Below, in pieces: positions 2,905 to 26,590 of a DNA stretch of 64,000 nt. A program made the position numbers and the translations under genes. The notes under the pieces were generated by a model that was given only the letters and a program-made list of their open reading frames with translations, was not told the DNA's origin and did no database searches. The stretch comes from Schmidtea nova (taxonomy: Eukaryota), in assembly GCA_044892505.1 (NCBI GenBank), contig CM097883.1, forward strand, positions 407,154,001 through 407,218,000, written 5' to 3'. Every line of letters begins with the position of its first letter. Within the stretch, counting starts at the first letter, position 1.

Positions 2905-3070
2905 CGTGTCTGTGTGCGAGATCGTTTTTTGTAATTTTCTCGCGTCTGTGTGCGCATGCTTAGTTTTGTTAGTGTCAATCGCGTCTGTGTGCGCATATTT
3001 TATTTCGAGTCTATTTGCGTCTGTGTTGCCGCGTGGTTGATTTAGGATTTGCTCGCGTATGTGTGCGCAT
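2905..3070. repeat. Array of 5 GCGTCTGTGTGCGC motifs separated by unique 20-25 nt spacers
   Basis: Motif cores at 2909, 2945, 2984, 3020 and 3058. The spacers are unrelated to each other. Confidence 0.85.
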
Positions 3071-4084: not shown

Positions 4085-4113
4085 GTGCAAGGGTGCACAC
4101 TTCTCCGTACTAG
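4085..4113 (+). mobile_element. Helitron 3' terminus
   Basis: Hairpin GTGCA-AGGG-TGCAC (4085-4098), followed 11 nt later by CTAG (4110-4113) and then T. An internal duplication lies upstream (about 3575-3660 vs about 3955-4035). The 5' end was not located. Confidence 0.65.
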
Positions 4114-4619
4114 TATAATATAAAAGGGAAATGTGAATTTTATAATATTGTAAAGAATCTATTTAAATTGTGTTTAGGTAAATTGATCTTATTATTTTAG
4201 TCTGTTATTCTTCGTTGACTAAGCTTATTGAATTACTTCGAAAACGTCAGTAGAGAGTAATAAAATACCGCAGTGTGATTCGATTTTTGTATATATGAAA
4301 GATAAAGTCAATATGAAATTCAGATTGAATTGAATCCTGTTTAATGCGAAGAATGCCTCTTATTGGCAATAAAAAATGATGTTAATTTACAAAATATTTA
4401 AAATGGGAAATTTTAATTTTAAAAAGATATTTTGTCACAGCCTTTATCAAGTGTATATTTACATACTTAAAAAAGACTGCCGAAATATTGTGTCCCTAAC
4501 ACCCAAAATAATGTTGATCTAGTCATAGAACTATTAATATGAAAATTATGAATTTAAATAAAAAGAGGTCTAAGGTGAAATCAAGAGATAACTATGGAAA
4601 TTGAAAAGTTAAAAATATG

Positions 4620-6135: not shown

Positions 6136-6249
6136 TTTGAATAAATTGTCATTTTTATTTAATAGAATATTTAAAATTGATAATTTAAAATAAAAAAAGG
6201 TAAATTTGTTTAAATATCATAACAAATGAAAACCAGTTTAGTTTTTCAT

Positions 6250-7761
6250 TATTACTTTTATAGAATAAATTTTATGCATTTGTTTAGTGATTCTGAATTA
6301 ATTTCTCAAGTTTCGATAATCCTAACAAGGAGGATAGCGTGAAATCTGCGAAAAAAATAACAAATAGATTCACGACAAAAAATATATCGAGCATTTAGAT
6401 GTGAAAACTTTACTCCCCAATAGAATATTGCTTTTCTGTATTGTATCACGTCTTTTAGCAACTGTTATACAAATTTTAAAAAGCTTCACAACTTGTTGGA
6501 GACTGCCTGTTGCATAATACCATCACGATCAATTAAACACCATACAAACACATTCTAAATCTCAAAGTCCTAAAGGGAATCTCAAAGAGTGGAAACCACT
6601 AGTAGACACTAATTCAAGGAAAATACAAGCACACAAAACAAACTATACTCAGTCATTTCCAAAGAAGAAATGGAGAACATTGAGTGCAAATTATTGCAAA
6701 ACTTTTGTCGTTCAAATGATATTGAAGTTGCCATTCCCTGAATTGCTTCTATTCAAACTAAAAAGGCTAAAGATTTCATCGAAGACCCTTATAAATTGAG
6801 TGTATTTTTGCCCTATATAGATTCCCTCGTTAGCTCATTAAACATAAGATTTTCTCAGGAAAACAATCTTTTTCGTCTATATCCAAAAAATTTAAAACAC
6901 TGACTCCGGAGCAAATCAGAAACTTGCCTTAAGAAATCAACAAAAGTAGCGATTTACTTAAAGATGGACTTGTTTTGTGCAAAATGACTGAAGACAGTGA
7001 AATAAGTTCTACCGAAGATATTATCAAGGCGTAAGCTGCGAATTGCTCTAGCATATCCGGTCTCGCCATCAACTATTGAAAAATTATTTAGCACCTGGCG
7101 CAGACTTAAGGCATAACTACGATCTACAACATCTGAGAGCAAGACTAGTACATTATCCATGCTAAGTGTACATAGAGAAAATTTTATAGCCAAAGTAATA
7201 AATTAATTTGGCAAAAATTAGAGAAGACTTGATATTCTCTTTGAAAATATTTACATATTATAATTGTTAAGTAATAAAATAAAATTTATAATCGTTATGT
7301 AATAAAAACAAAAATAACTAAGTATTCCTTAAAATCTTTAAAGAATTGTATAGCATATTAGCAAAAAATTCGAAAAAATATTATGTGCATAAACAAGGTT
7401 GTAGCACATTCGACACTATAATATGTTTACATCATGATGCATATATATATTTCGATACGTAATATTTATTCAAAGAAGAACTACAAAAATTGTTTAGCAG
7501 TTTGTTAACTGTAAGGAAATTTTATATAATTATCACACAATAGGATATATCACATATTCCAATTGTAATTTTTGCATCTCATCTATTTTCAACAAATACT
7601 ACGATCTGTTAATGTGTAAAATTTTAATCATTAATCTCAAACTCTAAAGTAGTTTTGCAAACAGGAAATTTTTTCTTAAAAGCCAGCAAAAAAAATAATT
7701 TACCTAAAAATCGTAATTAATATAAATTTTAATTTGCCCCCCCCCTTTATGGACGCCTCTG
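6250..7761 (+). mobile_element. hAT transposase remnant (ZMYM1-like) with 3' terminal repeat
   Basis: Plus-strand translation near 7030-7190 reads LRIALAYPVSPSTIEKLFSTWRRLKA*LRSTTSE...LSMLSVHRE (hAT dimerization domain). The terminus is TTTGCCCCCCCCCTTTATGGACGCCTCTG, ending at 7761. Confidence 0.7.
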
Positions 7762-8552
7762 AATACATTAACAGTTTTTAATTATACAATTGATTAAAAT
7801 TACTTATATTGCCGATTGTAACCAGACGAGTGATGAAATTCTAAAAAAATATTAATAATTAATAAAGTATTGCATAAGTTTATATAATTACCAGTTTTTA
7901 AAATGGTTGAATAAACAATTTAAATTAAATAAATTTTTGATTTATTTTATATAAACAAATAATATATTTTATTATCTATTTTTAATAAAATTATGATGAA
8001 AATTTACAATAGGAATTAAATTATGTTTCTAATAATATATGTTAATAGTTTTTGCATCGCAAATGCCAATAAAGCCAAAATTAAATGTTTCATATTCAGG
8101 TGACAACAAAAATAGTTCTATAGGTTTATTGGTCCTTAAATTTGAAAGTTTCTAAATTCATAGTTACCATATCACTGACATCATCATGATCCGCATAACT
8201 GACTTCACTTATGTGTCCATAAATGTGGTGGGTTATTAGCAATAAGTTAAATCTAATTACTATTGCTCGAACCTCAATAACCTCGCAAATAAACCTTACA
8301 CACCATCTTGTATCTCGTTACACAGTAACGTTGGTACTGTAACAACTGGGTGGACATCCGAAAGACCTGAACACTATTTATAGGGCGGTAGTTGATCAAA
8401 TATCTCAGTTGGGCCCAAGGACTACGAATAGCAGATATGTTGTCCATTTTTCGTCCATTTAACAGTTCAAGTTATAAATACTCTCCTTATATCTTCGATA
8501 TAGAGTTTACGATGGTTATTTTATTTTATTTTTATTATTGATTTATTTCTCA

Positions 8553-9636
8553 TGTTGGGCTGGCGAAATCGAAAATGAATTTTGTTTGAATTCATCAAAA
8601 ATTAAAAAGGAACAAGTTTAAAAACGCACGATAAAGCATTACGCAGTAAATTAACGCAAAAGAAAATAAAACAGTAAAGTACAATAGTAATCATGCGAAC
8701 CACATTCAATAAGTCGGTCGAGATAGGGCTTAAAAGATAGAAAAGAGGCATCTTAAAAGAGAGCCCACAATTTGAGTGCAGGTCGCATTTATACACGAAG
8801 GACCGCACGAGAATTGAATAGGGAAGATCATCGCTGTACAAAATTAAATAAATAATCTCTTATTGATACGAATAAATTGAGTTTCAATCATATTATAATG
8901 GAAGAATGCATGGGTGTCAGTCTTTTTTAGTATAAATAGACGCAAAAAATCAGTTGAATTGAATTGAATTAGTTTGGAGCTAGCACATATATTAATTTCA
9001 ATTTTGCCAGCCAGTCGCGTAGGTGAGTAGATTTATTTTGTGTATGGTAATCTGTAATCATGTTATATGAATGGTATTCAATAAATGTTTTGAATCATAA
9101 AAATTGCTGATTATTTGCGGGTAAACCCTCATAACAGCCGGGATAAAGTCGATAAGGGCATGTCCTAATGGTCTCGAGAGCTCATGGGCAATAATCGGCC
9201 TCTCGTCCGGACTCTCTTTGGAGGGTTATGCGTTGCGGCGTACTTGACCCAAATTTGGGCAGGAGGAAATTGGATTGCCAGGGGCATTCATCGTTTTGCT
9301 GAATTAATTGAGAAGAAATAAAGGATATTGTTGATAGCAGAAAGTAATAGATCGTCTAAAGGAAAATCATGCGATAGGACCGAAAAGAAAGTAGGTGCGT
9401 AAGTCCTTCTATCGGCAGCAAGAATCCGAAAGAGAGAATATAGTGAGGAGTAGTTTCGGCAACGGAGCTCACCTGCTCACTGGATTCTCACCACCGTGTA
9501 CAGTACCAACATATTTATTTGGGGAATAACTATGGGTGCATGTGTGTGATGGAGTAATATTTATGTTGAGGTGTGGGTTGTATTAACCCTTAGAAGTCGG
9601 TAATAATTTTTGTAACAACACCCATACCACCCAACA
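8553..9636 (+). mobile_element. Probable solo LTR
   Basis: TGTTGGG...CCCAACA inverted ends, imperfect 4-bp flanks CTCA/TTCA, and internal TATAAATA and AATAAA. Confidence 0.5.
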
Positions 9637-9752
9637 TTCATATCTAAGCTAGTAACTTTTAGTTTTAGCAAATATTTCAGCTTGTACACATAATTTTTCA
9701 CCACTTACTGGAAGATTTCATTAAATAATGTCAACAAACCATATATAAAGTG

Positions 9753-10466
9753 TGTTGGGGTTGTGTCTAAACAAGCACGAAATAAGATAAGAAGCACAAA
9801 ACTATGCAAATCAATAAAAAACATGAAAATTTGAAAAGTAATAATTAAAGTAAAAATATTAATTTAAAATTTGGAAAATTAGAACATAAAGATAGTGAGG
9901 GAAACTGGTATGGGAGGATGTTAGAGGATTAGATGAATTCAGATATGGTAATATAAAATAAAGGAGGGTCCCAGAAAGAAATATTATTAAAAACCATTTA
10001 ATTACCTTTTGAAAAACCAGAGCGGTATGGGAAACCCGAGTCATCTGTAGAATTACTCGGGAAAATTGGATGATGCAGAGACGCGCAGAAGGTGAAGGGA
10101 ACTCGAACTTAAATTGGTTTTTTAAAATAACTGATCAAGAGGCGATGAAAAATTATTCAATCAAAAAAATACTATAAAAATAAAAGCAAATTTAGCAGGT
10201 TTGTTAGTTGGTCGATGATAGTTTTATGAATTATTCAGGAGGCTAGATACAAAGTTTCAATTCAACTTAATTATTGCGTACCAAAAAAGGGGATATCCCG
10301 TTTGGAGACCTATCCCTTTCGCTGAAAAGTTCAGATTGTCAACAAAAGTTATTTAGTGTATTAAAACTAAATAAAAGTTATTGTTTTGGGGGACTTATAT
10401 TGATTGTGTAAAAGGACCATGAGGAGTCAGATATTTGTACCGACTTAATAATAAATAAATCCAACA
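9753..10466 (+). mobile_element. Solo LTR (Gypsy-like, 4-bp TSD AGTG)
   Basis: TGTTGG...CCAACA with AGTG on both sides. It shares the GAGGAGTCAGA segment with the LTR at 50680-51730. Confidence 0.8.
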
Positions 10467-10859
10467 AGTGCTTCGTCAACATCCATAGATTACCTTTGCC
10501 ATTTTTTGCTAATATATTAGGTTATATATAGTTAAACAATATCATTTGAATAAACTTTAATTTATTTTTCATTACAATATGAAATTGGGTTAGAAAAGTT
10601 AGTCTTTTTGCATCTGTTTATTTGAAAAATATATTATTTAGTTTTGGGTTACTTGATTCATAGAGATATTTCCGGACCTAGAACGTCACATGCCTATAAA
10701 TTCACATATATATTTTATATAATGAATGGTGAACCCATTTTATAATCACATTGTCAGCATGCAATTTATGAAAATATCAAGTAAACATAATGCAAATTAA
10801 AATTTGAAAAAAGTTAAAAATAATTTTAGCAGTTTTAGTTTTTCATATTAGTCTCATAG

Positions 10860-11549
10860 CAACCTTTAGTGTGAAGACTTCCCTGAAATCTCAAATGCTT
10901 CTCAATTCCATTTTCAAAATCCAAATCGAGCTCGATTCAAATGGGAAAACATTGTCCATCTTAGTGGGTGACACGATGCTAGTCCAAATCAGTGACAAGT
11001 CCGGATTGATGAAACAAAGGGAGATCTTTCATTACGGTATTAAGGACTCCATTGAAAAGGAAATCCAAGGAAAGTTTATGAACATAAAGAAATGGGAAGT
11101 TAATCACAATCTTTATGCCATTGACTTATCCCTTGTTTTTCATAAAAACTCCAACTCTCATATATTAGAAATATATTTTATTGATGCACCTTCGAAGGAG
11201 CTGTTAAAAAAGAAAATTAGCAATTTGCGTTTAGCCAAGCGAATCTATAAAAAAAGAATACATTTATTTCAACAACCCACATTGTCGTTGACAGTGAACT
11301 CAATATCCGGAAATTATTCCCAATGGAAAATTAATGAAAGTATTGTCGCGATTTGTAGGGCCTTTGACGGTATTCCGAATGAAATTCCAAAATTTGAGAA
11401 CTACCAACGATTTTCTAACATAAGCAGCACCTTGTCCATAGAAAGAAATGAAAGAATGATCAACATGACAGTTGGGGTCGTGAATCACATGACTAGGCTG
11501 AAATGTCAGGCGGGGTCTGCTATCCGAGTTCATACAATAAAAGTTTTTC
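10860..11549 (+). CDS. Exon encoding an N-terminal region plus an Ig-like domain
   Basis: Open frame with AICRAFDGIP...LKCQA and several NxS/T sequons. CTCATAG acceptor, then a 48-nt GT-AG intron at 11550-11597. No upstream exon or signal peptide was found. Confidence 0.7.
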
Positions 11550-11597
11550 GTAATATTATTTTATCTGTTTAATTGCAATTTCACCTATTTCAAATAG

Positions 11598-11885
11598 ACC
11601 ATCCAACCGAACTTTTTATTAAGCCAAAACTAAATCTTGTACATCCCAATACCACATTTCAATGTTACGTGGAAAATGGGTTTCCCGCACCGACAATTAA
11701 ATGGTACCTTACTGACGGGCCAATAAACTCATCGAATTATTATGACGTTCTTGGGAACGGTTCCTATTTATTTATCAAAAACAATTGTCCTAATCACTCC
11801 AAGTGGACATTTAAATGCATACTTACACATTTGATTCAGAATTCAAGTCAACTTCTAGTTAAAACGATCTCTTTTTTTGTTGAAA
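11598..11885 (+). CDS. Exon encoding an Ig-like domain
   Basis: FQCYVENGFPAPTIKWY...YLFIK...FKC. Ends at a GTGAGT donor at 11886 (phase 1). Confidence 0.8.
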
Positions 11886-12859
11886 GTGAGTCCTTTATAA
11901 TAAATTCTAATTCACCAATAAGCAATTAATAAGAACATTAATGATATAAGTTTAGTTCTTTAAAAAAAATTAAACTAGTCTATAGTAAATGTATAAAAAT
12001 AATATGATAATGAAAGATAACATTAACCCATGCCAATTAGTGGTTATCGTGATTAACCTTTTGAACTCTAATCAAATAATTAGGAATATAATTTCCAAAA
12101 ATGTATTTACTGAAAACTTGTCATATATAAAATGCCATTGTCCGCCCGTCCTTCTCACTCATATCTAAATTTATGTATTATTAGCTATAGTTATACTACT
12201 TTTAAAAGTAAGTAGTATAATAATTTTAATTTGTTTTTTATTATTGCCATATAAATAAATTGCAAATGTCTGACAGTTCTTTTGTCGTCCCTAGCAACCC
12301 ATATCTAATTTTATACTAATTCAAAAGATGGGGCAGTCGTCATGGGACAGCTTTGCATATAACTAGTAAAAATATAATATGCTCTTTTTATTGTTATTAC
12401 TTTAACAAATTTTGTAGAGATAATTTAAAAATAATTCAAATAGCAATTTCATACAAATTCGTCATAAAACTAAAATTTCATACTCGTTATAAATTTTTAT
12501 AGTTTTTAATATTTCATTCGTGAGATTTCCAATACTTTATTAAATTTTCTATTAAATTTGCCATTCAGTTTTTTTAGTATTCTTTAAAAATTAATAATGT
12601 GCTTTCAAACTTACCTTATATAAAAAACTCCCAATAATTACATTTTTCACTATTTGTATTATAAAACACCTTTATTTTAAAAAATATTATATTTATTTTG
12701 GTGAAACAAGAATTTATCATATATTTCAACTACACTTCACAATTTCAAATACAAGACTAAAAATGAATAACTTTAAAGAGACGCACACAAAGCTAAATAC
12801 CGTTAGATAAGATTTCATAAGACGAATTTGGACACATATCCCATATTATATTGAAACCT

Positions 12860-12925
12860 TTAAATTTAGCCTGTTTTTAAACTTCTGTTGATACATATGT
12901 GTCCCAGCAGCTGCGAAAGGGTTAA
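12860..12925 (+). mobile_element. piggyBac-type terminal repeat (one end only)
   Basis: ...GTGTCCCAGCAGCTGCGAAAGGG followed by TTAA (12922-12925). No matching left end was found. Confidence 0.45.
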
Positions 12926-14089
12926 TAGACTTTTAAAAAAGTCTTTTCTAATAACGCTTTCCTGAAGATGAGATTTGGACTTACACTAATTTTTGTTCCA
13001 AAATAAATATTAGGGCTTATTTTCAGAGGTTGTATTATATTTTGCCTATATGTATTGATCAAACATTACATTAGAAGACTGGCTATTCGTCCTATGTTTA
13101 AATCGTATTCTAAAATACTTTGGTAACATAGTTAAAAGAGAGCCAAAAAACTTGGAGAAAATTGTCATTCGAGTCATGAAAGACATATTTTCACATCAAA
13201 ATTTTTTTATGTACAAAAATTTACATTTATTCAAATAACATCATGTTGACATTTCTGAGGTAATCAGTGGAAGGAATGTAGATTGACGAGTTAACCACCT
13301 GCTCAATTGTCGTCTGAGATCCTTGACCCATAAACACCTCAGTTTTATCCACAAAGTTGGTATTTGGAAAATTCAATGCCATCAATAAATAACTTGAATG
13401 TAATGGAACATTTAATAACTTCAGTACCTTCCAGATTGAACAGTGTTACCGAGTTTCTTAGAGAAAGTTCTTATCGTAAATAGAAGTCGTGCAGCCAGTG
13501 TTGTAATTCTTTGAATTCTTCTAGAGACAATTTTAACTATGATGTCATTACAAGAACAATTGCTTGAATAAGCGTTTGCTCTCCTGATAGCAATCTATTT
13601 CCAGGGAATGTCTTCCAGCTCAAGAAATGTTTGTCGACATGTTTTTCTCATTGTTTCCCTTGATCACGTGTTGATCTTGGTTATCTTATTCTACTCACCA
13701 TTATTAAATCATTTGCAGATTTAATATCTTCTCTTTGAAGAAAATCATAAGATTCTTACTACTGAGGTTTTGATGTTTTACTCAACTTGATGACCTATAT
13801 AAATAATAAGACAAACAGTGGTTCGACAAAATATAATAAATAACAAAATTGTGTAAACACTAATAAATATATCCCGTAACCAAATAATTAGAGAAATTTT
13901 ATAGTTTTTCTATATTATGCGTCTTTTGATTTATATCCCTAATTGAGTTACTTGAGTTCGGTTATGTAATCTCTATGCTCGAATCAATAGTTTCTAATAG
14001 TCGATAACAACTATGAAATATTTCTTTAGCGAAGATTTTATAGGTGTGATTTGATTGAAAAACCAGTCCGTTTATGTACTAATTATGTA

Positions 14090-15467
14090 CTAATCTTACC
14101 CCCAAAAAATATAATTTATTTTTATATTTAGTATGCATGAAAACAGTATTCAACAATTTAGCAACAAAAAAAACAGTTAACGTCTTAAAGTTCACTTTCT
14201 GACCTATATCATGTCATCAATAATAAAAATTAATTTATGACATCAATAATTTATCTCAAGAAAAACTACCCCCTAAACAAACATGAATTTATTAGAATTA
14301 GCTAGTGTAATGGATGATAAACAAACTAGTGTTCGGTTTATTCAGAGACACGGCCTACTTCATAATCCAAGAGTATGCAGCAATGGTCATGAAATGCAGC
14401 TGCAACTGACCGACAAACACGATCGGTGGCGTTGCAAGAGCAGGGACTGCTGTGAAGATATCCCAATTCGTCGTGGCACTTGGCTGCCGGGATCAAAATT
14501 ACCATTTAGAACAATTATATTATTTATCAACTGTTGGTCGGATGATATCAGTCGGATTTATCAGTTTTTGTTAACGTGAATTGCAAATGAACGCTTCAAC
14601 AGTTGTCGACTGGAATAATTACTTACGAGAAGTTTGCGCAGCTACTCTACTGAGCCAACCCAACCAGATGCTAATCGGTGGCCCAGGTTTACATGTAGAA
14701 ATTGACGAGAGTCTATTCACAAAGCGGAAAATAATGCTGGGCGTGTGACTCCACAAAAGTGGGTCTTCGGCGGCATATATAGAGAGACTCGTGAATGTTT
14801 CCTCTTTACAGTTCCGGATAGAAGTACAAACACTTTGATGACCATTATTACTGCGCAGATTCGACCTGGAACTATAATACTTTCCGATAGGTGGGGTGCG
14901 TACAATGGTATTAGACAGCAGTGGGGCCAGCATTACACTCACTTAACGGTCAACCATACTTATAACTTTGTTGACCCTATTACACGTACACACACAGAAC
15001 GTTGAGAAAATGTGGAGTCGCGCCAAGAAACGAAACAAACGTCATAACGGAACACGCAGGCAGATGTTGGAGTTGTATTTATGCGAGTTTATGTGGTGTC
15101 AGAACTTGAACGGTAAGATAAAATCCAACGCTATACTCGACGACATAGTTGCATATTGGCCTCCTGTTGAAACCTATTGAAGGACTGGGAATGTTGCCTT
15201 ATATTGGCATATGACTTTATTTAAAAATATTTAGTTGCTGTTTAACGGTTATCGTATTTGTATAATTATATTTTTCTATATAAAAGTCAAATGTATTTTT
15301 ATTGAGGATATATTTTATAACATTTTTCTATTGCGGCGAATCTATAAAAAAGATAGTAATCAAGTAAAATATTATTGAAAAATATAATATAAAAATATCA
15401 TTTTTATGCATACTAAATATAAAAATAAATTATATTTTTTTTGGGGGTAAGATAATCCAAAAGCACC
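14090..15467 (+). mobile_element. Merlin DNA transposon with frameshifted transposase
   Basis: ORF pieces at 14283-15180 carry CSNGH..WRC, IGGPGLHVEIDESLF, WVFGG, IILSDRWGAY and HTQNVEKMW. The inverted repeat ATCTTACCCCCAAAAAATATAATTTATTTT is present at both ends. The right end finishes ...AAAAGCACC; the left tip is lost. Confidence 0.9.
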
Positions 15468-16065
15468 CAATAATGTTTGTTATTGTTCTATTTGAGTTGA
15501 TTTAAAATGAAATTGTTTTCATAAAAGAATTGTTTTTTGACCTTGGAATTGAAAATATTATTTTACTTTTATTATTTATTTATTCGAAAAAAATATTAAA
15601 ATATTTTTAGATATATAAAATAAAATAATAACCATTTTTCAAATAACTTTAAAATAAAATTAATTAACATGAAAATGCTTTTTCAAAATCGCAAAAAATA
15701 TTATTTAAATACACAGGTTTAGGAAATAAAATGCAATAGAATTTCCTTAAGTTTACATTGTACGTACTTAGTTCCATACCTAGCATTACTTTGGAAGTCC
15801 TCCATTATTTCATTCTTGTAAATCACGGAATAATTCTTTCTTTTTGCATTCTTCTTGTCTGGGAATCAAAATAGTATACCCTTAAATCTAGTTTAAATCA
15901 AAAAATTAGTATGATATTACTTACAAAGACAATGTTATCAATTGCACATGTTATTCCTGTGTCTGCACTGCAGTTATTGGTAATCCTATTTTGTCCTTAA
16001 ATCCCAGAAGTTGAATCTTCATTTCACTTATTTTTGCGTGATTTTTTTTTCATCGCATGATATTA

Positions 16066-17030
16066 CGTGGTGCGTTCAATAAGTACCCGACCTGACGAAG
16101 AAAACGAATTCCAAAATGGGCCATTGTCGTAGAGAAACCATAGTGTCGTATTCTCCTGCTTCTGTCTATTCTTTCTGGTGGTTGCCACGAGTTGGCTGTA
16201 ATAGGCAGCGTTGATGGTGATGCCTTTATCCGCGAAATCAATGAGAATAACACCTTTATGATCCCAGAAAATGGAAAGCATCATCGCTCGCCCATGACTT
16301 GTCCCCTTTCGCATCTTCAAAGATGGCTTCTCTCCAGGCAGTTTTCACTCTGCTGACTCACGCTTTGTTTCCGGCAAATACATACTGAGTGGGGTTTCAT
16401 CCTCCGTTATTAAATTTGCCAGGAAAGTCTCACCATGCTGGTCCCACAGGTTCAAGTTGTTCTGACTGCACTCCAAGCGGTTTCGCATCATTTCACCAGT
16501 CAAGAAGCGGGGTATGAATCTGGAGCACAGTTTTCTGATACCCATGTATTTCAATTTTGCGTGGGCTGTACCAACACTGATGTTGAGCTTCGTTGACAGC
16601 ATTTTCATGGTGATTTGACGTTCTTCTTGGACAATCTTCTCCAATTTTTCATCAACTGTGTCAAAAATTTCTTGTGGCCGACCTGATTTTTCTTGATCAA
16701 AAACGGAGGTGCGACCACCTTTAAACTCTCTGACCCAATATTTAACAGTTGTCAGAGATGGGGAGTCATGTAGGTAAGTTGACTGCAAAAGATCGTAGAT
16801 TTCACTGCACGTCTTCTTCTGCAACACAAAGAACTTGATAACGCTGCGATACTCAACGTCTGAAATCATTAGACCGACGAAAATTCAAAATGTCACAATA
16901 AAAATTTTAATGCGTTTGATAAAATAAAACAATAACTGAAATCAAAACCTATATTTATTTACACAAAAAAACTAAAATTTTTCATTACATTTTTTTTACC
17001 TTTGGTCGGGTACTTATTGAACGCACCATG
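16066..17030 (-). mobile_element. mariner element, internally deleted, with TIRs and TA TSD
   Basis: TIR C(G/A)TGGTGCGTTCAATAAGTACCCGACC at both ends with TA flanks. HTH and LITEDET (first D) in 16345-16869, and WFLYDN (second D) running directly into the TIR. The third catalytic residue is absent. Confidence 0.92.
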
Positions 17031-17151
17031 TAACTAGGGCTTATTTTTCAAACATTCTGAAAAATCAAACTAAGCCTCGTACTAGCTCATAAGAAAATAC
17101 GATAAATGATCCCATTATAATCTCATTGGCTGAAACTTATTAATAATTCAG

Positions 17152-17892
17152 ACAATACGATTGGTCAATGTAATATTGATTGCATGCATATTCGGCTACT
17201 TGAAGTTGAATATTCAACGAAACAAATCAATCAACCAACCAGCGATGTCAAAAACAATCAATTGGATATAATGTCATTAAAAAAGGAAGTTTCAAGCATC
17301 CGCGACCATATATATCAATTTAAAAAGGATTTTATTGTTTCAATTGCGCATTCAAAAATGGAAGATAAAATTTTACATGATCGAATTAGTCTATTAAAAA
17401 ATGAAACAATCTTATCAAATATCTTGCTCTCAAAGATGTCGCCGGCAAACAAATCCATAATAATTTCAAATCGTTATCACAAAATTCTGAAAGAAAAAAA
17501 TGTATCCAATGATAATATAAATCGGATTGATAAAACAAACTCGGATCTTGATGCATTCAAACAATTGATATTGACAGAGATTAGTAAGTTATCAAAAGAT
17601 ATGCTAATTATCCAGAATCATTTAAATTTTTCTGTTCAAGAACATTTGAAACACATTGTGAATACTTTCCAGATGAATATGAATGTGATTAGATTGGAAA
17701 AAATTGTCACTCGAAATTTCTCTCAATTGCAAAGCAATTTCCTAACAAAATACAATATATTGAAACTGGAAAATGAAGACCTAAAAGACCAGCTTGATAA
17801 ACTGAAATCGAAAAATAGAGAAATAAATAACGAAATACGCTTAAAATTGACAGAACTTGAAAAGAATTTGGAGGCCATTGGCAAAGAAATAA
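17152..17892 (+). CDS. Long coiled-coil exon (stalk upstream of the MATH domain)
   Basis: Open frame with heptad character. TTCAG acceptor ends at 17151 and GTAAAT donor is at 17893, both phase 1. Sequons NET, NKS, NVS and NFS x2. Confidence 0.75.
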
Positions 17893-19664
17893 GTAAATTT
17901 TTATATTATCTGTGATGTAATTGTAAGGAAATATTTAATTGCACTAGATCCATTATTATTATTGTATTGATGTCTGTATGCTGACTTGAATTATCTTGAA
18001 TGCCTGGTCCTCAGATAATGTCATTGTTCATTATTTATCCCACTGATACATACACTGTAGACACAAACAGTATACACCTGTTTTCATACATTAAGAGATT
18101 CTATAATAAAAGTTCAAAATTATCAATATCAAATGAAAACTTACGTTGATGTAAAATTTATTATGTGATAGACAAAGTGGGAAATAAATAAATTATACAC
18201 ACAAACACACACAATGTAAAATGCATGCAAACTTTAAAAGGTAAATTAATTTACGCGATTAAGAAATCTATAATAAATTTATTTATTTTTAAAATAAAAT
18301 TTTTGGGTAAATACCTGGAATATTTCCTAGATTAGTGGAGAAAATGAATAAATAATATAGTAAGTTTTATTTTGATGAATTTTAATATAAAATTTCATAT
18401 ATTTCTGAAATTTTTTTGCAAACTTTTTCCGTTTTTAGAAACCAAAAATATAATACCATCTAATTATTTTCAATTTATAGACAATTAAACACATTTACAC
18501 TTCAATTTAGATCATTTTGAAGTCTCAGATAATGCAGGACAAAATATGAAATTTGGCAATACTTAAAATAGAAAATAAAACTTGAAATTTCAATTTTGAA
18601 AATAAAATATTATAATGTAATTTCCGAAATATACCAAATCAGAGTAATCAAAAACCATGTAAAATGGTCAAAAATAGTTCCGATTTGGAAGATTTCTTGG
18701 AATATGCAAAATATATTTCAGAAATAAATAAAAAATTTTATTTAATAATAATAATTATAATAAATATTATTTAAAAATGATTTTTTGACTTACTTTTAAT
18801 GAAAATAATTCCCAAAACATGTTAAAAATCATAATTTTATAGAAAGTATTTAAAAATAAAAATAAAATTGTAGAACAAAGGTAATCTTCCAAAGCTTCAA
18901 TAGAGATCTCATATCATTTTAAGATAAAAAAAACCTTAAAAGATATCTTGTTAAATAAACTTAAATGTACACACCTGCTAGCATTATAGTTACTCTTAAG
19001 CTACCATTATATATATACTACTTTTAGTCAATGAACCTTTCCAAAGTTATTGTTATTTAATCTTTAATATTCCTCGTCTTGAATCTTGTTACGATTTCAT
19101 TTTTTAAGTTTTTTTAGAGAAAAATCAAAAATAGTTTTCGTCTATTGTCTTAAAAAGAATGAAAATAAACGGAATTTCTATGTGAAATGAAAATATTTGA
19201 AATTGAAAAGAAAGGACCAAGGGTGATCAAAATCAAATATGTTATTAATATACGTGCTTGTCTAGTCGAACTTCAAATTTTAGATAAGTGCTTCTCAAAC
19301 TCATTAAAAAAAATTTTCTTTGGAAAAATTAGAATATTTTGCAAAATTGAACAGTAAACACTGCTAAAACGTGGTTAATGTGTACCCCGTTATATGAAAA
19401 CTTGTTATAAGAAACCCGAAATCAGTACAAATCACATTAATTCGAACTGCGTTATATCGAAACCTCCCACGCAATAGGAAAGAATCGTAAAATTTAACTG
19501 CGGTATATTGATACCGCATTATAAGAATACTGTTTAATAAGAGAGATTACTGTATTTATATTCAGTTTATTTTAATAATTTTTAAATTACATATAGCAAA
19601 TATGCCGATTACCAAATCGCTTCGTCAGCTCAATCACTAACAGCGATTACATAATTATGCAATC

Positions 19665-20120
19665 CAGTGGTGTCTTATGGAATTTGGAACCCCTGTGCTA
19701 AGAATTATAAAGCGCTTTAAAAAATGTTTTCAGATTTTTTATTTAGAAAAGTACAAAGATGCTCAGTTTAAATAATAAAAATCATTTTTTAAAAAATTAA
19801 TTCAATAACAAAAAAATTATAAATAATAATGTAATATAGATAAATAAAAGTTATAAAAAATAAAAATATAATGAAAACAAAATAGTAAACCTAAAAAAAA
19901 TAAAATAAATAGTTATTTGATAATATAAATTTAAATATTGAATAATAACAATTATTAAAGTGTACACAATAAATAACAAAATATATAAATAAATAATAGT
20001 AACTTTAATTTGTTTTGATTTTTTATACATTCTAATTTATAACAAAATGATTTATTTATCATATTCACTGACAGCCCAATCTTACTAAAGCCCTTGTGCT
20101 ACACACATAAGACATCTCTG
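19665..20120. mobile_element. Non-autonomous hAT-type MITE
   Basis: TIRs CAGTGGTGTCTTATG / CAGAGATGTCTTATG (reverse complement). 8-bp TSD ATGCAATC / TTGCAATC. Confidence 0.75.
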
Positions 20121-20213
20121 TTGCAATCTGAGTCACCATTGCTAACACAATAATCGTTTACGCAAGATTTTCTTACGACAAAAAATAAATAAGAAATTAG
20201 TATTTTAAACAAT

Positions 20214-20841
20214 TGTTGGGTTATTAATGAGTAGTCGGTTGGTATCTGACTCAGGTGTTCTTTCATTCCAAAAATAAATTAGACCCAACACAATAATTTT
20301 TATTTCTACAATTCAATCACAAGAATATCAATCACAAAAGTTATAACTGTTATCTGTACTCTTCTGCGTTATGGTAGAAGACCCAGTGGAAGATCTTCCT
20401 TTCTTGTAAGCAGGAAATTGATAGACCGATAGCCTATAACTTTCAATTACCGTTTCATCTTCCTTTTCCCCTTTCAGATTTCTCGCTCAACTCTTTTGTA
20501 TTTTTCTTCGACCAACTGGCAACGTCGGCAAATTGCTCTCAGTTTATATAGTACCTTGTTGCTCAGTTCTATCACGCCTTAATGGATCTGTCAAATTATT
20601 AATTAAATTGGGGGTTACGATTAAGTAGGTTTGTGGCTTTTCCACGGGGTACCCTTCAATTCGTCAATCTATTTTTCTAATTAATAGATTTGTTGATGCC
20701 CCGGATTTCCCACATCGCTCGGATTTCCCATTAGCTCTGGTTTCCTTAGGTTTGCACTTTAACTATTAATTTTCCAAATTTCGTATTTTTATTGATTTGT
20801 GCATTTTAAATATATTTTCTGTTTATTTTAACTACCCAACA
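20214..20841 (-). mobile_element. Solo LTR (4-bp TSD CAAT)
   Basis: TGTTGGG...CCCAACA with CAAT on both sides. One end is homologous to the LTR at 50680-51730 (TCTGACTC..GTGTTC). TATATAAA lies on the minus strand. Confidence 0.82.
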
Positions 20842-20970
20842 CAATGCAAACTTTATTAAACATTCCGAATGTGCCTCTTAATAATTTGAATATTTAAACA
20901 ATTTCTAAACAAATTTTATTAGTACTAATATGAAAGTTTTTATTTAAGAAAAATCCTAAAAATATTTCAG

Positions 20971-21482
20971 AATTAAAAAATCGGAAATGCATCTATCATG
21001 ATCCCGTGGGCAAATTCCAAAACAAAGGACGAAATGGAGAATTTCACGAATGGAAAATCATTGAATTCACTAAGTCAAAAGGTAATCAACAGCCATTTTA
21101 CAGTCCGACATTTTATTCTTATTTTTGGGGATACAATATGCGCATCAAATTAGTTGTGGAATTTCCCACATTCTCATCGCTAGGAAATTTGGAGATCTAT
21201 TTCCAAATAATTCCGGGAGAATTTGATCTCCATCAACGATGGCCAATGAATGACACCATAGAGCTCTTACTCGTAGGAAATACTGTTGTTCAAGAATATG
21301 CTTACCAAAGACTGCTTAAAAACGAAACCTCGTCGGACAATGAAATATTCAAAACGCCATCTTGTGAAAGCCACATACTTTTAGAGTATAAATTCTCTAT
21401 ATCGAAATCTTTTGAAAAAAATTATTTTTTAACAAATGATACTCTGGATATTTATTTCAAAGTTACTAAAAAATTGTCATAG
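20971..21482 (+). CDS. Terminal exon encoding a TRAF-type MATH domain
   Basis: FYSPTFYSYFWGYNMRIKL...LEIYFQIIPGEFDLHQRWPM matches the TRAF/meprin MATH pattern. The TTTCAG acceptor is in frame with the upstream coiled-coil exon. Confidence 0.85.
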
Positions 21483-21728
21483 TTTCTCAGTTTTAAATAA
21501 AATATTAAAATATCTTCAGAAATATTATATATTTAAAACGTAAATTAACAATAAAGGCATTCAGAATAAAGAATCACAATTTTTAGAGTCAACCAGTGGC
21601 ACAGTTTGAAGGAGGTATGGGAGCTTGATTTTGGAGTGACCTTTTTTAATCTTTTTCATATGACCTTGCTCGCTGGTGGGAAAACCTGGCAAAATCATAG
21701 GAATTAACCAACTATTTTTTGTCTTTGC

Positions 21729-21764
<36 letters not shown>

Positions 21765-21849
21765 CACACTTGATAAAGGCTGTGCCGAAATATTGTGTTA
21801 TTGTTTATAAAAAAAAATTTGATCTATAGTCATTATGAGAATTATTGAT

Positions 21850-21897
<48 letters not shown>

Positions 21898-23269
21898 GTT
21901 ATGATTTTGGGCCCTTTTTTCAAAACATTTTCCTTGTGCTTTCAGTAGATTAACATTTGTATAAATCATTCATTTTTGAGGTTTTTAATTTAAAAATTAT
22001 AAAAAAGTTCGCGCACTCACTTGTTTCTAATATGTAGACAAGGTCATAAATGTAGCATTAATATTTATATTTTNNNNNNNNNNNNNNNNNNNNNNNNNNN
22101 NNNNNNNNNNNNNNNNNNNNNNNNNNNNNNNNNNNNNNNNNNNNNNNNNNNNNNNNNNNNNNNNNNNNNNNNNNNNNNNNNNNNNNNNNNNNNNNNNNNN
22201 NNNNNNNNNNNNNNNNCAGCATTAAGTATTAAATTAATTAATAAGTAAGTAACAAAATAAGCCTTTATTACAAAAATAATTTTATTAAGTGAGAAAATTT
22301 TCGATTATAAAATAATCCTCATCAATCTCTAATTCTGCAAATAACTGGTATCTTCATTCATTCTGTTGTTTCTTTTTTCGTGATTTATTCGAAATAAACT
22401 AAATATTTGCTAAAATCAAATACAATTTATTCTAACTAAAATTAAACATAAAATATATTTTAGAAATACATATTGATTCCATTTTAAATTCCTTTTTTTT
22501 AAATTTCCAAATTATTTTGTCTCAATTAATATTTTATGCAAATTATTGATTTCAGTAAATTTAAAACATATTTAAGATTGAAATTAATGTCAATTTAATC
22601 AAAGGTTACGACTAAAATTTAGATTATACTTTTAGATTATTACAATGATTATAATAATTTTAGAGGAAACTAAAAAAATTCAAATAACTTCCAAAGAAAT
22701 TTCGTTTCAATTTTTAAGTAAATTAGGGAAATTTTATGATGATAATTGAAAGAATTTAGATGTAAGATAAATTTTAACAAGTATTTTATGTAATTAATTT
22801 GTTTTAGGAAATCAGATGAAGTTAAGGATTAATACACAATAATTTTGGAAATTTGAGAAGTCTTTTACCGTAAATATATTTGTGTTAATTCAATATTCTT
22901 TGCTAATTAAATGGTCAAAACTTTTAATTAAGATTATATCAGATTTTAGGATTATTTATTAATTATTTTATGTTAAAATTTGAAAATCAAAGCCAATAAG
23001 CATAGTCAGTATAAGCTATAATGACTTGAATAAAGGATAAACAAATAAGTTTTGTCCGGTGCAAATACTCAGCTTTCCAATGCTGTAATGAGTGTATAGG
23101 TCTGCAACTTTGTGTGTCTATGCTATATATGTCGTAGATTGGTAAAATTAAAAAAAATCGCTTATTAATAATTTTTAACATTGCTATTAACTTTAATATG
23201 TCTTACATGGATTAAGCACTTTTAATAAATTTCTTGTTTGACTAAAATACTTTTTGTTTTCATTAGAAT

Positions 23270-24110
23270 ACGTCGATTTAAAGAGAATTTCGCACGAGAG
23301 GATATCCGCAAGTTAATCTACTACAATTGGAAACGTGGATAAGTGCCTTCCCAGATTGCAAATGAAATAAATTTGACACTGGGGAAGGACACAAGAAATG
23401 AGCGCACTTGTCGACGCTGAGTTGCAAACTTCAAGGAAAGAAACTTTGATGTTGAAAACAAAGAGCGATGTGGGAGGCCCTCTCTTGATATCAACGATAA
23501 AATTCTAGCTCTTTTAAAGGAGCACAGCAGCACTGTGGAAATGAGCGTGGACCTTGAAGTTTGTCAGCAGACAATTCGAAATCATCTGCTTGCAATGCGC
23601 ATGCGTTACCTGTGCAACTACTGGGTCCCACACAAGTTGTCCGAGCAACAAATGGCCAACCATGAGAAAATATTCAACGAGCTGCTGTGCCAGTATGCTG
23701 CTAATGACTTCCTCGGTCAGCTCATTACAATGGACGAAGTCTGGATCTATTGGAACAACGATGGAACCTATCGCCACCGATCGTGGAGAGGTGCAGGTGA
23801 TACCCTTGATGTGGAAGTTCGCAACACACTCTCACCCAGGAAACATCTCATGTCCGTCTTTTGGGACTGTAAAGGTGTGATTATGATGGATATTCTGCCG
23901 CAGGGTGCTACAATCACTGCCGATGTTTACTGCGAACAGCTGTCCCGTCTGGTGACGGCAATACAACAAAAGCGACGCCGTCTTCTTGGTGGTGGGTTTC
24001 ATCAAATTCACTATCTCCCCGACAATGCACGACCCCATACGGCAGCCAAATCTGAGCAAAAACTTACTGACATTGGTTTTACTGTTATTTTATTTATTTT
24101 ATTAAATTAA
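23270..24110 (+). mobile_element. mariner transposase pseudogene, 3'-truncated
   Basis: REDIRKLIYYNW, RCGRPS, WVPHKL, LITMDEVWI and YLPDNARPHTA motifs. In-frame stops in the N-terminal part. It ends before YSPDL. Confidence 0.88.
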
Positions 24111-24610
24111 AATATAAATCAAAATATAAACCATTTTCCAAAGTTAAAAAATTAATTTACATAAAATATTTTCAAAACAAAATATTCTTTCAATATTATA
24201 TAAAATATTATCATTAATTGTGTCCATCAGTATAAAATAAAAAAATGTCAATAAATGTTCGCAAGATCACAAATTGGTAAATTGTCATAATTATATTGTC
24301 AAAAATTAATTGTCATTCGATCTGCTGTTTGATCTTGATCGCCATCCACATGCACATTTATTCTATATTTCTTTCCTCCTATTCTGTAGTCATCATTAAT
24401 TTCAAATAAGTTGACTACTTTTCCTATTTCTAGCATTATTTATTGTTCTTTAGGTTACTATTTATTGTGCGTTAGCGTACTACAAAATTTTATTATAAAG
24501 ATTTAATGAGTGTTATTAAGTGTATGACGATGGCGATAACCTAATAAATCGACAAAATATTTATTGACATTATTTAAATTTTAATTTAATCATAATTAGT
24601 GAAAATAAGA

Positions 24611-26590
24611 ATGAAGAAATTGAGCAAAAAGCTGTCGGTATCTAATACTGGCCCAAAATTCCCAACAATTTCCAGATTTGAAAAGCTACACGTCCCTGGA
24701 ATCAGGGGTAGTGCAACTAGCAGTAAAGTCTATATTGGTTTTCCAAAGGTTCCAGCATATTTAAAGGAAATTCACTGCAAAGGAAATCCTTTCACCGAAA
24801 TTAACAATCTAAAAACCTTTGATTTGAAAAAGTTAGAAAACAGAAAAAATAATTTCGAAAAAAAGTTTCTAAAGTTTCCAGTTTCTGAGCATGTTACCAG
24901 AGACATCCGAATGAAGTATAACGCAAAGAATAAATTGAAGCAACTTCAATATGCGATAGAGCTAAAAGAGAAATCCCTAAAAGAAATTTCAGAAGAATCG
25001 ACATACAGTTTCTTGCTACCAAGGATAAAATTCAATCCAACATTTGACTTTCTTGTTAATAAAAGAAAGGTATGTCTTTTGGAACTAGGAATAAAAATCA
25101 AAGAACAACATCTGTCAAAATTACATAGAGTTGTTGAGCAAGAGAGAGAATTAATCAAAAAAGAATATGAACGTCTTGAACGAGATCAGAAAAAAGAAGA
25201 CGAAAATTTGAAAGAGACCTGCGAAAAAACCTCGGGAATTATAAAGCGAGTCGATGAAGAAAATCAAAAACGAAATCTCGTGGCAAAGAAATTGAAGCAT
25301 GCCAATTTCAAAAGAGACAAACTCAATGCTCAATGTATTCACCTGGAGAGTGAATATATCAGATTTAAGGCTTTCAGAGAATTCTTAAGAGACTGTTACC
25401 GACAAAATGAGTATGAAAGTATACTGAAGAGAAGAAGTAAAATGGATGAATACAAAATGGAAGCAGTCTTAAATGAAATGGAAAAACAACATAAATTTTC
25501 TAATGAATCGAGAGAATCATACGATATAGACCTTATAACGTTACAAGAAACTGTCGGTCCAGTGGCAAATGTTAGCAATGCCTATTTTAATAACATTAAA
25601 AAAAGAAATAATTTTATTAGAAAATCAGGAATTAAAGATGTATATATTAAAGAAAGATTAGTGAAATGTAAAACTATATTAAGCAACAGTGACTTGGATA
25701 CTTTGAAATCCAACATAATCCTAGGACTTTCCAATGTTAACAATAATGTTAAATTTGCAAGCTCTAAAAGTGAAGAAGACACGACTCTAGAGTTTCTTCT
25801 TAGTTCATCTTTGGATATAATCAATGAAAAAACAAAAGATTCAGAATCTTCTGAAGATTTTACATATTTCCAGGATCCACTCGACCTGATCAATGTCGTC
25901 AGTGAATTGGAAGTAAATAACTTGTGTTTGATAGAAAATGTACAAGAGCAAGAAGAACTGTGTGAATCGTTGATTAAGAAGACCCATAAGATCAAGTCAA
26001 AAATAGAAAAACACATCCATTCCGTCGATTCGCTCATCCATACCATTAGGGAGGACCTTACCGAGTTAACCGAAAAAATAGATTTCATAGAAAATGTTAA
26101 TTTCAATTTAAACACGCATTTGAATATTACTCGTTACAGCGACATATTTTACCTTAAAGATCTCGAAGTTACGACCTTGGATGAGTTGATCGGCTATCTT
26201 TTCAATAAAGTTAGCAAGTTGTATTCAGCAGTATCCCAAATCGACGATCCAAACGGAATTGACTTGATCGAAATGCTAACGAAAATTGAAAGTCTCATTG
26301 ATGGGTTGACTGTCGAATTGCTGACATATGACGAGTTGGCAATAAATAAAGCAAAGAAAGTTGTCGACGAGAACAAAATACTTGCAGCCCGTTTGAAGAA
26401 CAAAGAAATGATGCAAGAGAAACAAGTTATAATGATGAAGAAAACAATGGATGAAGCAAACAAACCGCCTAGGTATAAGCATGGCCGGAAAGTCGTATAT
26501 AGATCCGAACCGGTGAAGCCGAAACTCGTCGTTGCCGCTACCAACACAGACAGTCGCAGAAATGAAGAATATAACTTCTTTTTTACATAA
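24611..26590 (+). CDS. CFAP100: Cilia/flagella-associated coiled-coil protein, CFAP100 (CCDC37/CCDC38 family)
   Basis: About 660-aa intronless ORF with a DUF4200-like block (FLVNKRKVCLLEL...FREFL), YFQDPLDLINVVSELEVNNLCLIEN, and C-terminal GRKVVYRSEP...EEYNFFFT*. Confidence 0.75.
   Translation: MKKLSKKLSVSNTGPKFPTISRFEKLHVPGIRGSATSSKVYIGFPKVPAYLKEIHCKGNPFTEINNLKTFDLKKLENRKNNFEKKFLKFPVSEHVTRDIRMKYNAKNKLKQLQYAIELKEKSLKEISEESTYSFLLPRIKFNPTFDFLVNKRKVCLLELGIKIKEQHLSKLHRVVEQERELIKKEYERLERDQKKEDENLKETCEKTSGIIKRVDEENQKRNLVAKKLKHANFKRDKLNAQCIHLESEYIRFKAFREFLRDCYRQNEYESILKRRSKMDEYKMEAVLNEMEKQHKFSNESRESYDIDLITLQETVGPVANVSNAYFNNIKKRNNFIRKSGIKDVYIKERLVKCKTILSNSDLDTLKSNIILGLSNVNNNVKFASSKSEEDTTLEFLLSSSLDIINEKTKDSESSEDFTYFQDPLDLINVVSELEVNNLCLIENVQEQEELCESLIKKTHKIKSKIEKHIHSVDSLIHTIREDLTELTEKIDFIENVNFNLNTHLNITRYSDIFYLKDLEVTTLDELIGYLFNKVSKLYSAVSQIDDPNGIDLIEMLTKIESLIDGLTVELLTYDELAINKAKKVVDENKILAARLKNKEMMQEKQVIMMKKTMDEANKPPRYKHGRKVVYRSEPVKPKLVVAATNTDSRRNEEYNFFFT

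What the first reader, a model, noticed from the sequence alone, without database searches (positions are those of the whole stretch)
10860..21482. Candidate single gene encoding a secreted Ig-Ig-coiled coil-TRAF/MATH protein
Seen in sequence: four plus-strand exons (10860-11549, 11598-11885, 17152-17892, 20971-21482) have GT/AG boundaries that are all phase 1 and join in frame into about 743 codons. The long introns contain no recognisable host exons; what could be identified there is transposon material. NxS/T sequons run through the Ig, coiled-coil and MATH parts. Established: TRAF-type MATH domains are normally cytoplasmic (TRAFs) or extracellular in meprins, and Ig + coiled coil + terminal recognition domain is the layout of mollusc FREP-type lectins. 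Inference: this could be an undescribed trimerising extracellular recognition or adhesion protein. No signal-peptide exon was found.
Basis: partly seen in the sequence, partly recalled or inferred. Interest (0 to 1): 0.75.

Follow-up and report, generated by a model that had tools for sequence, protein, structure and literature searches.

The report
Ig exons followed by TRAF-type exons
Four open, splice-compatible exons in a transposon-rich stretch of a probable flatworm genome encode an immunoglobulin module and then a TRAF-type coiled-coil plus MATH module; joined, they would make a domain combination not seen before, but nothing available here shows that they are joined or that the product is secreted.

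Summary
The four plus-strand blocks are open, AG/GT-bounded, all phase 1, and sum to 742 codons plus a stop.

- **Exon 4:** a complete but divergent TRAF-C/MATH domain.
- **Exon 3:** an all-helical, heptad-periodic rod.
- **Exon 2:** an I-set/IgCAM-type Ig domain.
- **Exon 1:** matches nothing, so the "first Ig" rests only on a cysteine pair.
- **Intron 2:** holds two transposons bounded by inverted repeats.

The single-gene, secreted reading is neither shown nor refuted. The run finder was closed, so there was no RNA test. No ortholog exists in any database searched. All 138 nearest MATH relatives are TRAF-type or MATH-only, and none has an Ig domain.

N-glycosylation sites are enriched only in the Ig part (P=0.0006). 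In the coiled-coil plus MATH part they are near chance (P=0.10).

One new point: a signal-peptide-like stretch lies in frame just upstream of exon 1, but a TGA separates it from the only in-frame ATG.

My estimates are one gene about 0.45, two adjacent genes about 0.40, and a disabled locus about 0.15. Earlier first-reader notes of this scan report MATH modules elsewhere in this genome, but not this architecture.

The parts
10790..10807 (+). In-frame ATG, four further codons (MQIKI), then a TGA stop at 10805-10807, directly upstream of the open frame of exon 1
   Evidence: Codon listing; frame extents
10808..10861 (+). Eighteen codons open in the exon 1 frame that read as a signal-peptide-like stretch (KKLKIILAVLVFHISLIA). 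The only AG in phase 0 with this frame is at 10812-10813
   Evidence: Hydrophobicity 2.97, reached by 3% of all open 18-codon windows and by 8% of pyrimidine-rich acceptor-like ones
10860..11549 (+). Exon 1 (229 codons plus 1 base). An N-terminal part of about 135 residues of unknown fold with no cysteine. A C-terminal part of about 95 residues with Cys165 and Cys215 and 4 NxS/T sites, possibly a divergent Ig domain. First ATG inside the exon at 10895
11550..11597 (+). Intron 1, 48 nt, containing an in-frame stop at 11570-11572
11598..11885 (+). Exon 2, a symmetric phase 1-1 exon of 288 nt. It encodes an I-set/IgCAM-type Ig domain with a Cys22-Cys73 pair, 5 NxS/T sites and a consensus donor AAA|GTGAGT. 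If unspliced, the frame runs on to a stop at 11927-11929
   Evidence: Pfam C2-set_2 26.8 bits (cut-off 21) and Ig_3 29.7 (cut-off 30); PDB DCC, Robo and neurofascin down to 6e-10
11886..17151 (+). Intron 2 in the one-gene model, or the spacer between genes in the two-gene model; 5266 nt
14093..15453 (+). IS1595/ISXO2-like DNA transposon remnant with 53-nt terminal inverted repeats (94% identical) and a transposase frame broken into three pieces
16063..17033 (-). Internally deleted mariner with 30-nt terminal inverted repeats (97% identical). It ends 118 nt upstream of the exon 3 acceptor
17152..17892 (+). Exon 3 (246 codons plus split codons), an all-helical segment with heptad periodicity. 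A CxxxC pair lies at residues 6 and 10. The first ATG is at 17184, which would be the start codon in the two-gene model. The only AG in the open stretch ahead of that ATG is at 17150-17151
   Evidence: period 3.56, z=3.5; helix 119-245; ten-residue block means rise from 76 at residues 181-190 to 87-97 at 191-246
17893..20970 (+). Intron 3, 3078 nt, with dispersed-repeat pieces at 18152-18284 and 18758-18963
20971..21482 (+). Exon 4, holding the end of the helix and a complete, divergent TRAF-C/MATH domain (residues about 25-165 of the exon). TAG stop at 21480-21482
   Evidence: 11 of 19 strongly conserved family positions kept
21496..21501 (+). AATAAA, 14 nt after the stop; a possible polyadenylation signal, weak evidence in AT-rich DNA
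   Evidence: Sequence read

Best explanation
**What is shown.** The four blocks are genuine coding exons of a host locus in a transposon-rich region. Earlier, unchecked notes of this scan call the genome a flatworm. There are two modules. The first is IgSF-type: an unknown domain of about 135 residues, a cysteine-paired Ig-like segment, and an I-set Ig domain. The second is TRAF-type: about 240 residues of helical coiled-coil-prone rod, then a divergent TRAF-C MATH domain.

**What is inferred.** By a narrow margin, I think the most likely reading is that the modules are spliced into one mRNA through phase-1 introns. This would be a lineage-specific exon-shuffling product within the known planarian expansion of TRAF/MATH genes.

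**How it would work.** The product has no membrane-spanning segment. The Ig part looks like a secretory-pathway protein. If a signal peptide is supplied upstream, the rod would oligomerise, presumably into trimers as in TRAFs. It would then carry MATH heads at one end and Ig domains at the other, as a soluble multivalent binding protein.
For: - The exons are open far beyond chance and all phase 1.
- The exon 2 donor is a full consensus GTGAGT placed exactly at the end of the Ig domain, so exon 2 is probably not a terminal exon.
- Only one AG lies in the open stretch ahead of exon 3's first ATG, and it falls in the matching phase, a one-in-three chance.
- A CxxxC pair sits between that acceptor and the first Met, where interchain disulfides would sit at the head of a rod.
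- At least 2.3 kb of the 5.3-kb gap is two transposon insertions bounded by inverted repeats.
- No RING or TRAF zinc-finger exon, and no other host exon, lies between the modules.
- The Ig region is enriched in N-glycosylation sites, 9 against 2.9, P=0.0006. Both Ig-like segments have a cysteine pair about 50 residues apart. No 19-residue window is hydrophobic enough for a membrane span.
- The MATH domain keeps the fold-defining S-P-x-F-Y, G-Y and G-x-x-D...W-P motifs.
- The MATH expansion in planarians is published (PMC6109357; PMC7586133).
Against: - There is no RNA evidence at all.
- No ortholog or paralog with this architecture was found.
- All 138 nearest MATH relatives carry only MATH with or without RING and TRAF zinc fingers. 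None has Ig or MAM, and none resembles exons 1-3.
- Exon 3 has its own ATG 32 nt after the acceptor. This fits a first coding exon, possibly with a spliced leader added.
- A coiled-coil plus MATH protein of about 405 residues is a known layout.
- TRAF domains are normally cytoplasmic.
- Glycosylation-site enrichment in coiled coil plus MATH is not significant (P=0.10).
- No start codon with a signal peptide was found. The signal-peptide-like stretch is cut off from its ATG by a TGA.
Confidence: 0.45

Rival explanations
1. Two adjacent genes on the same strand. The first is an IgSF gene made of exons 1-2, ending at the 11929 stop or in a small unrecognised tail exon. The second is a TRAF1-like gene made of exons 3-4 with only a coiled coil and a MATH domain. 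It would start at ATG 17184, with AG 17150-17151 serving as a spliced-leader or 5'-UTR acceptor. The matching phase would then be coincidence.
For: - ATG 17184 lies 32 nt downstream of the single AG.
- The product of about 405 residues matches the size and layout of relatives such as P0046, P0077 and P0092.
- All nearest MATH relatives are cytoplasmic TRAF-type.
- Planarians trans-splice a share of their mRNAs, and planarian MATH transcripts often lack RING and zinc fingers.
- A phase match happens by chance one time in three.
- The glycosylation-site statistics differ between the two modules.
Against: - A consensus GTGAGT donor at the exact Ig-domain boundary is unexpected for a last exon.
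- The distance between the modules is short once the two transposons are removed.
- No candidate tail exon for the Ig gene could be singled out.
- The Ig gene would lack a start, a signal peptide and a membrane anchor just as much under this reading.
Confidence: 0.4
2. A recently disabled or never-functional locus. The exons are still open, but the gene has lost its start: ATG 10790 is followed by a TGA at codon 6. Alternatively it is a 5'-truncated duplicate stranded among transposons.
For: - The in-frame sequence ATG-MQIKI-TGA is followed at once by a textbook signal-peptide core.
- No alternative signal-peptide exon lies in the 10.8 kb upstream.
- The MATH domain is unusually divergent, at 49.7 bits where relatives score 135-200 bits. 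Eight of 19 conserved positions are changed.
- The surroundings are almost wholly mobile elements.
Against: - 742 codons without a stop or frameshift in 30% G+C DNA allow, by my own estimate, less than about 1% neutral divergence since any loss of function.
- All six splice sites are intact.
- The hydrophobic stretch may simply be the acceptor's pyrimidine tract read in frame. This happens in 8% of comparable open windows.
Confidence: 0.15

Closest known systems
TRAF family, especially TRAF1-like and planarian TRAF-like proteins that lack RING and zinc fingers
   Same: The C-terminal TRAF-C MATH domain is preceded directly by a coiled coil. The best PDB matches are TRAF2, TRAF3 and TRAF6. The core motifs are kept.
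   Different: There is no RING or TRAF zinc finger. The helical part is unusually long, at about 240 residues. Eight of 19 conserved positions are changed, including the G-x-x-x-F stretch of the usual peptide groove. It may be joined to Ig domains, which none of the 138 relatives has.
Meprin alpha and beta (astacin-MAM-MATH-EGF-TM)
   Same: This is the one well-known case of a TRAF-type MATH domain outside the cell. The Pfam family is shared.
   Different: There is no astacin, MAM, EGF or membrane-spanning segment. Sequence similarity is weaker than to TRAFs, at E=0.014 against 1e-6.
I-set IgCAM domains (DCC, Robo, neurofascin, contactin)
   Same: Exon 2 has the G-F-P-x-P-x-I-x-W and Y/F-x-C pattern and matches these at down to 6e-10. 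It is a phase 1-1 exon that encodes one domain.
   Different: There are only one or two Ig domains. There is no FN3 domain, no membrane anchor and no recognised signal peptide.
Mollusc FREPs, and collectin, ficolin and C1q-type oligomeric recognition proteins
   Same: The layout only: N-terminal modules, an oligomerising helical neck and a C-terminal beta-sandwich head. This is an analogy from established knowledge.
   Different: There is no fibrinogen, C-type lectin or C1q domain. No homology was found. Secretion and oligomerisation are untested.

Membership tests
TRAF family | C-terminal TRAF-C (MATH) domain | tested here: met
   Pfam PF21355 at 6e-13 and 49.7 bits (cut-off 27.4), covering profile positions 3-123 of 125. 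PDB TRAF2 at 9e-7.
TRAF family | Coiled coil (TRAF-N) directly N-terminal to the MATH domain | tested here: met
   Heptad periodicity peaks at 3.56 residues, z=3.5 against shuffles. The AlphaFold2 single-sequence model is all helical, and residues 191-246 have ten-residue pLDDT means of 87-97. The exon 3 to exon 4 junction itself is inferred from splice sites only.
TRAF family | N-terminal RING and TRAF-type zinc fingers (absent in TRAF1) | tested here: not met
   None in the four exons. No Cys/His-rich open frame on the plus strand of intron 2 apart from the transposase.
TRAF family | Conserved core and groove residues of TRAF-C | tested here: inconclusive
   Eleven of 19 positions conserved at 75% or more in 39 relatives are kept. 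The NGDG-loop, L88, G138 and F142 equivalents are changed.
TRAF family | Trimer formation and cytoplasmic binding to receptor tails | not testable with these tools
   Needs expression and biophysics.
Immunoglobulin superfamily, I-set/C2 | Profile match and B-F cysteine pair in exon 2 | tested here: met
   C2-set_2 at 26.8 bits (cut-off 21), Ig_3 at 29.7 (cut-off 30), I-set at 22.3 (cut-off 23.7). DCC, Robo and neurofascin down to 6e-10. Cys22 and Cys73.
Immunoglobulin superfamily, I-set/C2 | Ig domain in the C-terminal half of exon 1 | tested here: inconclusive
   No Pfam hit even at E=10 and no PDB hit. BLASTP against exon 2 gives E=0.74. The model has pLDDT about 30. Only Cys165 and Cys215 and 4 glycosylation sites speak for it.
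Secreted or extracellular protein | N-terminal signal peptide after a start codon | tested here: not met
   No convincing ATG-to-GT phase-1 signal exon lies in 1-10860. The in-frame hydrophobic stretch at 10808-10861 has no ATG after the TGA at 10805-10807.
Meprin | Astacin protease and MAM domains N-terminal to the MATH domain | tested here: not met
   No such Pfam hits in any exon.
FREP (fibrinogen-related protein) | C-terminal fibrinogen domain | tested here: not met
   The C-terminal domain is MATH.

The most novel reading that the evidence does not exclude
All four exons form one mRNA whose product enters the secretory pathway. The start could come from an unrecognised upstream exon. It could also come from a flatworm spliced leader, whose 3'-terminal AUG would be in frame if joined at AG 10812-10813. 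That join would give M-LKIILAVLVFHISLIA, a complete signal peptide. The result would be a soluble, glycosylated, oligomeric protein with Ig domains and an extracellular TRAF-type stalk and MATH head. That would be a new class of extracellular recognition or adhesion molecule, built from a module otherwise used for cytoplasmic signalling.
Probability: 0.22. Interest if true: 0.7.

Novelty: new variant of a known kind. Interest (0 to 1): 0.4.

Why it matters
Planarians are known to have a large and mostly uncharacterised expansion of TRAF/MATH genes (PMC6109357, PMC7586133). A member fused to glycosylated Ig domains and lacking any membrane span would put a TRAF stalk-and-head outside the cell. 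Only meprins are known to carry a MATH domain there. That would suggest part of the expansion serves extracellular recognition rather than adaptor signalling. If the locus proves to be two genes, it is an ordinary orphan IgSF gene next to an ordinary divergent TRAF-like gene.

Tried and rejected
**Closed or left out**
Every search was made exon by exon, by reference.
- The third word search was not spent.

**Searches that found nothing close**
- A word search with exon 1 found nothing.
- An exhaustive HMMER search with exon 4 gave 138 hits, none above about 39% identity, and no protein of the same species.
- phmmer of exons 1-3 against those 138 hits found nothing.
- Exact look-ups of the 17184-17912 and 46020-47858 products found nothing on record.
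- Metagenome scans with exons 3 and 4 and a viral-contig scan with exon 4 found no relatives.
- The scan's own index, queried by sequence with exons 1 and 4, found nothing.
- tblastn found no paralog inside the window.
- Rfam found nothing on 8000-24000.
- Paper searches for an extracellular or secreted MATH domain, or for an Ig-MATH protein, returned nothing relevant.
- Cluster look-ups of the top hits gave no names.

**A control on database coverage**
- A neighbouring 663-residue ORF finds only a 76%-identical relative.
- This species' own proteins are therefore not in the protein database. The absence of close hits says little about whether the gene is expressed.

**Analyses that did not help**
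- The AlphaFold2 single-sequence model of exon 1 was unusable, at pLDDT 36.
- I considered arguing that decayed transposons beside open exons prove selection on the exons. I dropped this because defective copies can insert already broken.
- The best separate upstream signal-exon candidate is 472-511, with a GTGAGT donor. I rejected it as too short and too distant to credit.
Full report
**Observation**

Translating the four blocks in all frames shows one open frame each. The blocks are exon 1 (10860-11549), exon 2 (11598-11885), exon 3 (17152-17892) and exon 4 (20971-21482).
- Every block has an AG just before it, and the first three have a GT just after.
- Each junction splits a codon after its first base. 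The split codons read H, N and K.
- The total is 742 codons plus the TAG at 21480-21482.
- The open frames run only 9-18 codons beyond each acceptor and 7-14 codons beyond each donor.
- The window is about 30% G+C. By my own estimate a random codon is then a stop about 8% of the time, so these are coding sequences, not chance.

**What each exon encodes**

All searches were made exon by exon, by reference.

- **Exon 4** is a complete TRAF/meprin-type MATH domain.
  - Pfam PF21355 scores 6e-13 and 49.7 bits against a cut-off of 27.4, covering profile positions 3-123 of 125.
  - Its best solved relatives are the TRAF-C domains of TRAF2, 3, 6, 5, 1 and 4, at 1e-6 to 1e-4. Meprin matches only at 0.014.
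  - It is divergent. Relatives score 135-200 bits on the same model.
  - Of 19 positions conserved in at least 75% of 39 full-length relatives, 11 are kept. The fold-defining S-P-x-F-Y, G-Y and G-x-x-D...W-P motifs remain, while the NGDG loop and the G...F stretch have changed.
- **Exon 3** has no family match beyond weak coiled-coil noise.
  - Its core hydrophobic residues show a 3.56-residue period, and a/d occupancy is 3.5 SD above shuffles.
  - AlphaFold2 from the single sequence makes it all helical, with helices at 3-23, 30-93, 97-115 and 119-245.
  - Ten-residue pLDDT means rise from 76 at residues 181-190 to 87-97 at 191-246.
  - With exon 4 it forms a TRAF-N plus TRAF-C module.
- **Exon 2** is an Ig domain of the I-set/IgCAM kind.
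  - Pfam scores are C2-set_2 26.8 bits (cut-off 21), Ig_3 29.7 (cut-off 30) and I-set 22.3 (cut-off 23.7).
  - It matches DCC, Robo, neurofascin and contactin down to 6e-10.
  - It has a Cys22-Cys73 pair.
- **Exon 1** matches nothing.
  - There was no Pfam hit, no PDB hit and no word-search hit.
  - Its model is unusable at pLDDT 36.
These hold Cys165 and Cys215 and four glycosylation sites. This is a pattern-level suggestion, not a test.

**Introns and surroundings**

- Intron 2 (5266 nt) contains an IS1595/ISXO2-like element with 53-nt inverted ends (14093-15453). It also contains an internally deleted mariner with 30-nt inverted ends (16063-17033).
- Together these make up 2332 nt of the gap.
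- Neither intron has a RING, TRAF zinc-finger or other host-like open frame on the plus strand.
- The window has no paralog of any of the four exons.
- The rest of the window is mostly mobile DNA.
- Earlier notes of this scan call the genome a flatworm and report many TRAF/MATH modules in it, some on mobile elements. I did not check those notes.
- A large MATH/TRAF expansion in planarians is published (PMC6109357; PMC7586133).

**Is the product secreted?**

- N-glycosylation sites exceed the composition-matched expectation in the Ig region: 9 against 2.9, P=0.0006.
- There are none in the first 136 residues of exon 1.
- In coiled coil plus MATH the count is only weakly above chance: 8 against 4.9, P=0.10.
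- No 19-residue window reaches a hydrophobicity of 1.0, so I infer there is no membrane span.
- The Ig part therefore looks like a secretory-pathway protein. The other half gives no independent sign of it.

**The 5' end**

- A search of the 10.8 kb upstream for ATG-to-GT phase-1 mini-exons gave nothing convincing.
There it reads KKLKIILAVLVFHISLIA, a typical signal-peptide core.
- This stretch is bounded by a TGA at 10805-10807, and an in-frame ATG lies five codons further up at 10790.
- Such hydrophobicity occurs in 3% of all open 18-codon windows, and in 8% of those that look like pyrimidine-rich acceptors.
- There are three possible explanations:
  - It is the acceptor tract read in frame.
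  - It is a first exon disabled by a stop.
  - It is a signal peptide started by a flatworm spliced leader, whose 3' end is AUG (PMC12582326). This holds only if the genome is a flatworm.
- On the third explanation, the only AG in the right phase is 10812-10813. Its upstream tract is poor, with 8 pyrimidines in 25.

**One gene or two?**

*For one gene*
- The exon 2 donor is a full GTGAGT at the exact domain boundary.
- The single AG ahead of exon 3's first ATG is in the matching phase, a one-in-three chance.
- A CxxxC pair lies between that AG and the first Met.
- The gap is short once the transposons are removed.
- There is no other partner exon.

*For two genes*
- ATG 17184 lies 32 nt after the acceptor, as expected for a first coding exon. 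It could carry a spliced leader, since planarians trans-splice.
- The resulting coiled-coil plus MATH protein of about 405 residues has a known layout and size.
- Among the 138 proteins that match exon 4 in 1.84 billion representatives, none has Ig, MAM or any extracellular domain. None resembles exons 1-3.

**Limits of the evidence**

- No ortholog of either model exists in the collections searched.
- A control with a neighbouring ORF found only a 76% relative. This species' proteins are therefore not in the database, and absence there says little about expression.

**Verdict**

The single-gene, secreted interpretation remains open.

| Reading | Probability |
|---|---|
| One gene | about 0.45 |
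| of which secreted | about half, i.e. about 0.22 |
| Two adjacent genes | about 0.40 |
| Recently disabled locus | about 0.15 |

If it is one gene, the Ig plus coiled-coil plus MATH combination is new among everything searched. If it is two, both genes are ordinary members of known kinds.

Noticed in passing
window 10790-10861: In-frame ATG, four further codons, a TGA, and then an 18-codon signal-peptide-like stretch running straight into exon 1. The only phase-0 AG (10812-10813) would put a flatworm spliced-leader AUG in frame with it.
   Followed up: partly
window 24599-26590 (+): An intact 663-residue ORF with a weak DUF4200 coiled-coil match. Its only database relative is a 660-residue protein at 76% identity over 99% of its length, from a metagenome-derived source. 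It could be a host single-exon gene or transposon cargo.
   Followed up: partly
window 32421-36917 (-): An array of about 784-bp units at 91-100% identity. Each holds a 173-174-residue open frame with a partial DDE_3 transposase match, so a transposase fragment has been tandemly amplified.
   Followed up: partly
window 46017-47858 (-): An intact 613-residue ORF with a BED zinc finger, probably a hAT-type or domesticated transposase. It has no exact copy on record.
   Followed up: partly
window 14093-15453 and 16063-17033: Two complete-ended but internally decayed DNA transposons inside intron 2: an IS1595/ISXO2-like element with 53-nt inverted ends, and a mariner with 30-nt inverted ends.
   Followed up: yes
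window 21730-21900: (CA)n and (TA)n microsatellites about 250 nt downstream of the stop codon, followed by an assembly gap at 22074-22216.
   Followed up: no
window 23535-24110 (+): Another mariner transposase fragment (Transposase_1, 1e-17), 2 kb downstream of exon 4.
   Followed up: partly
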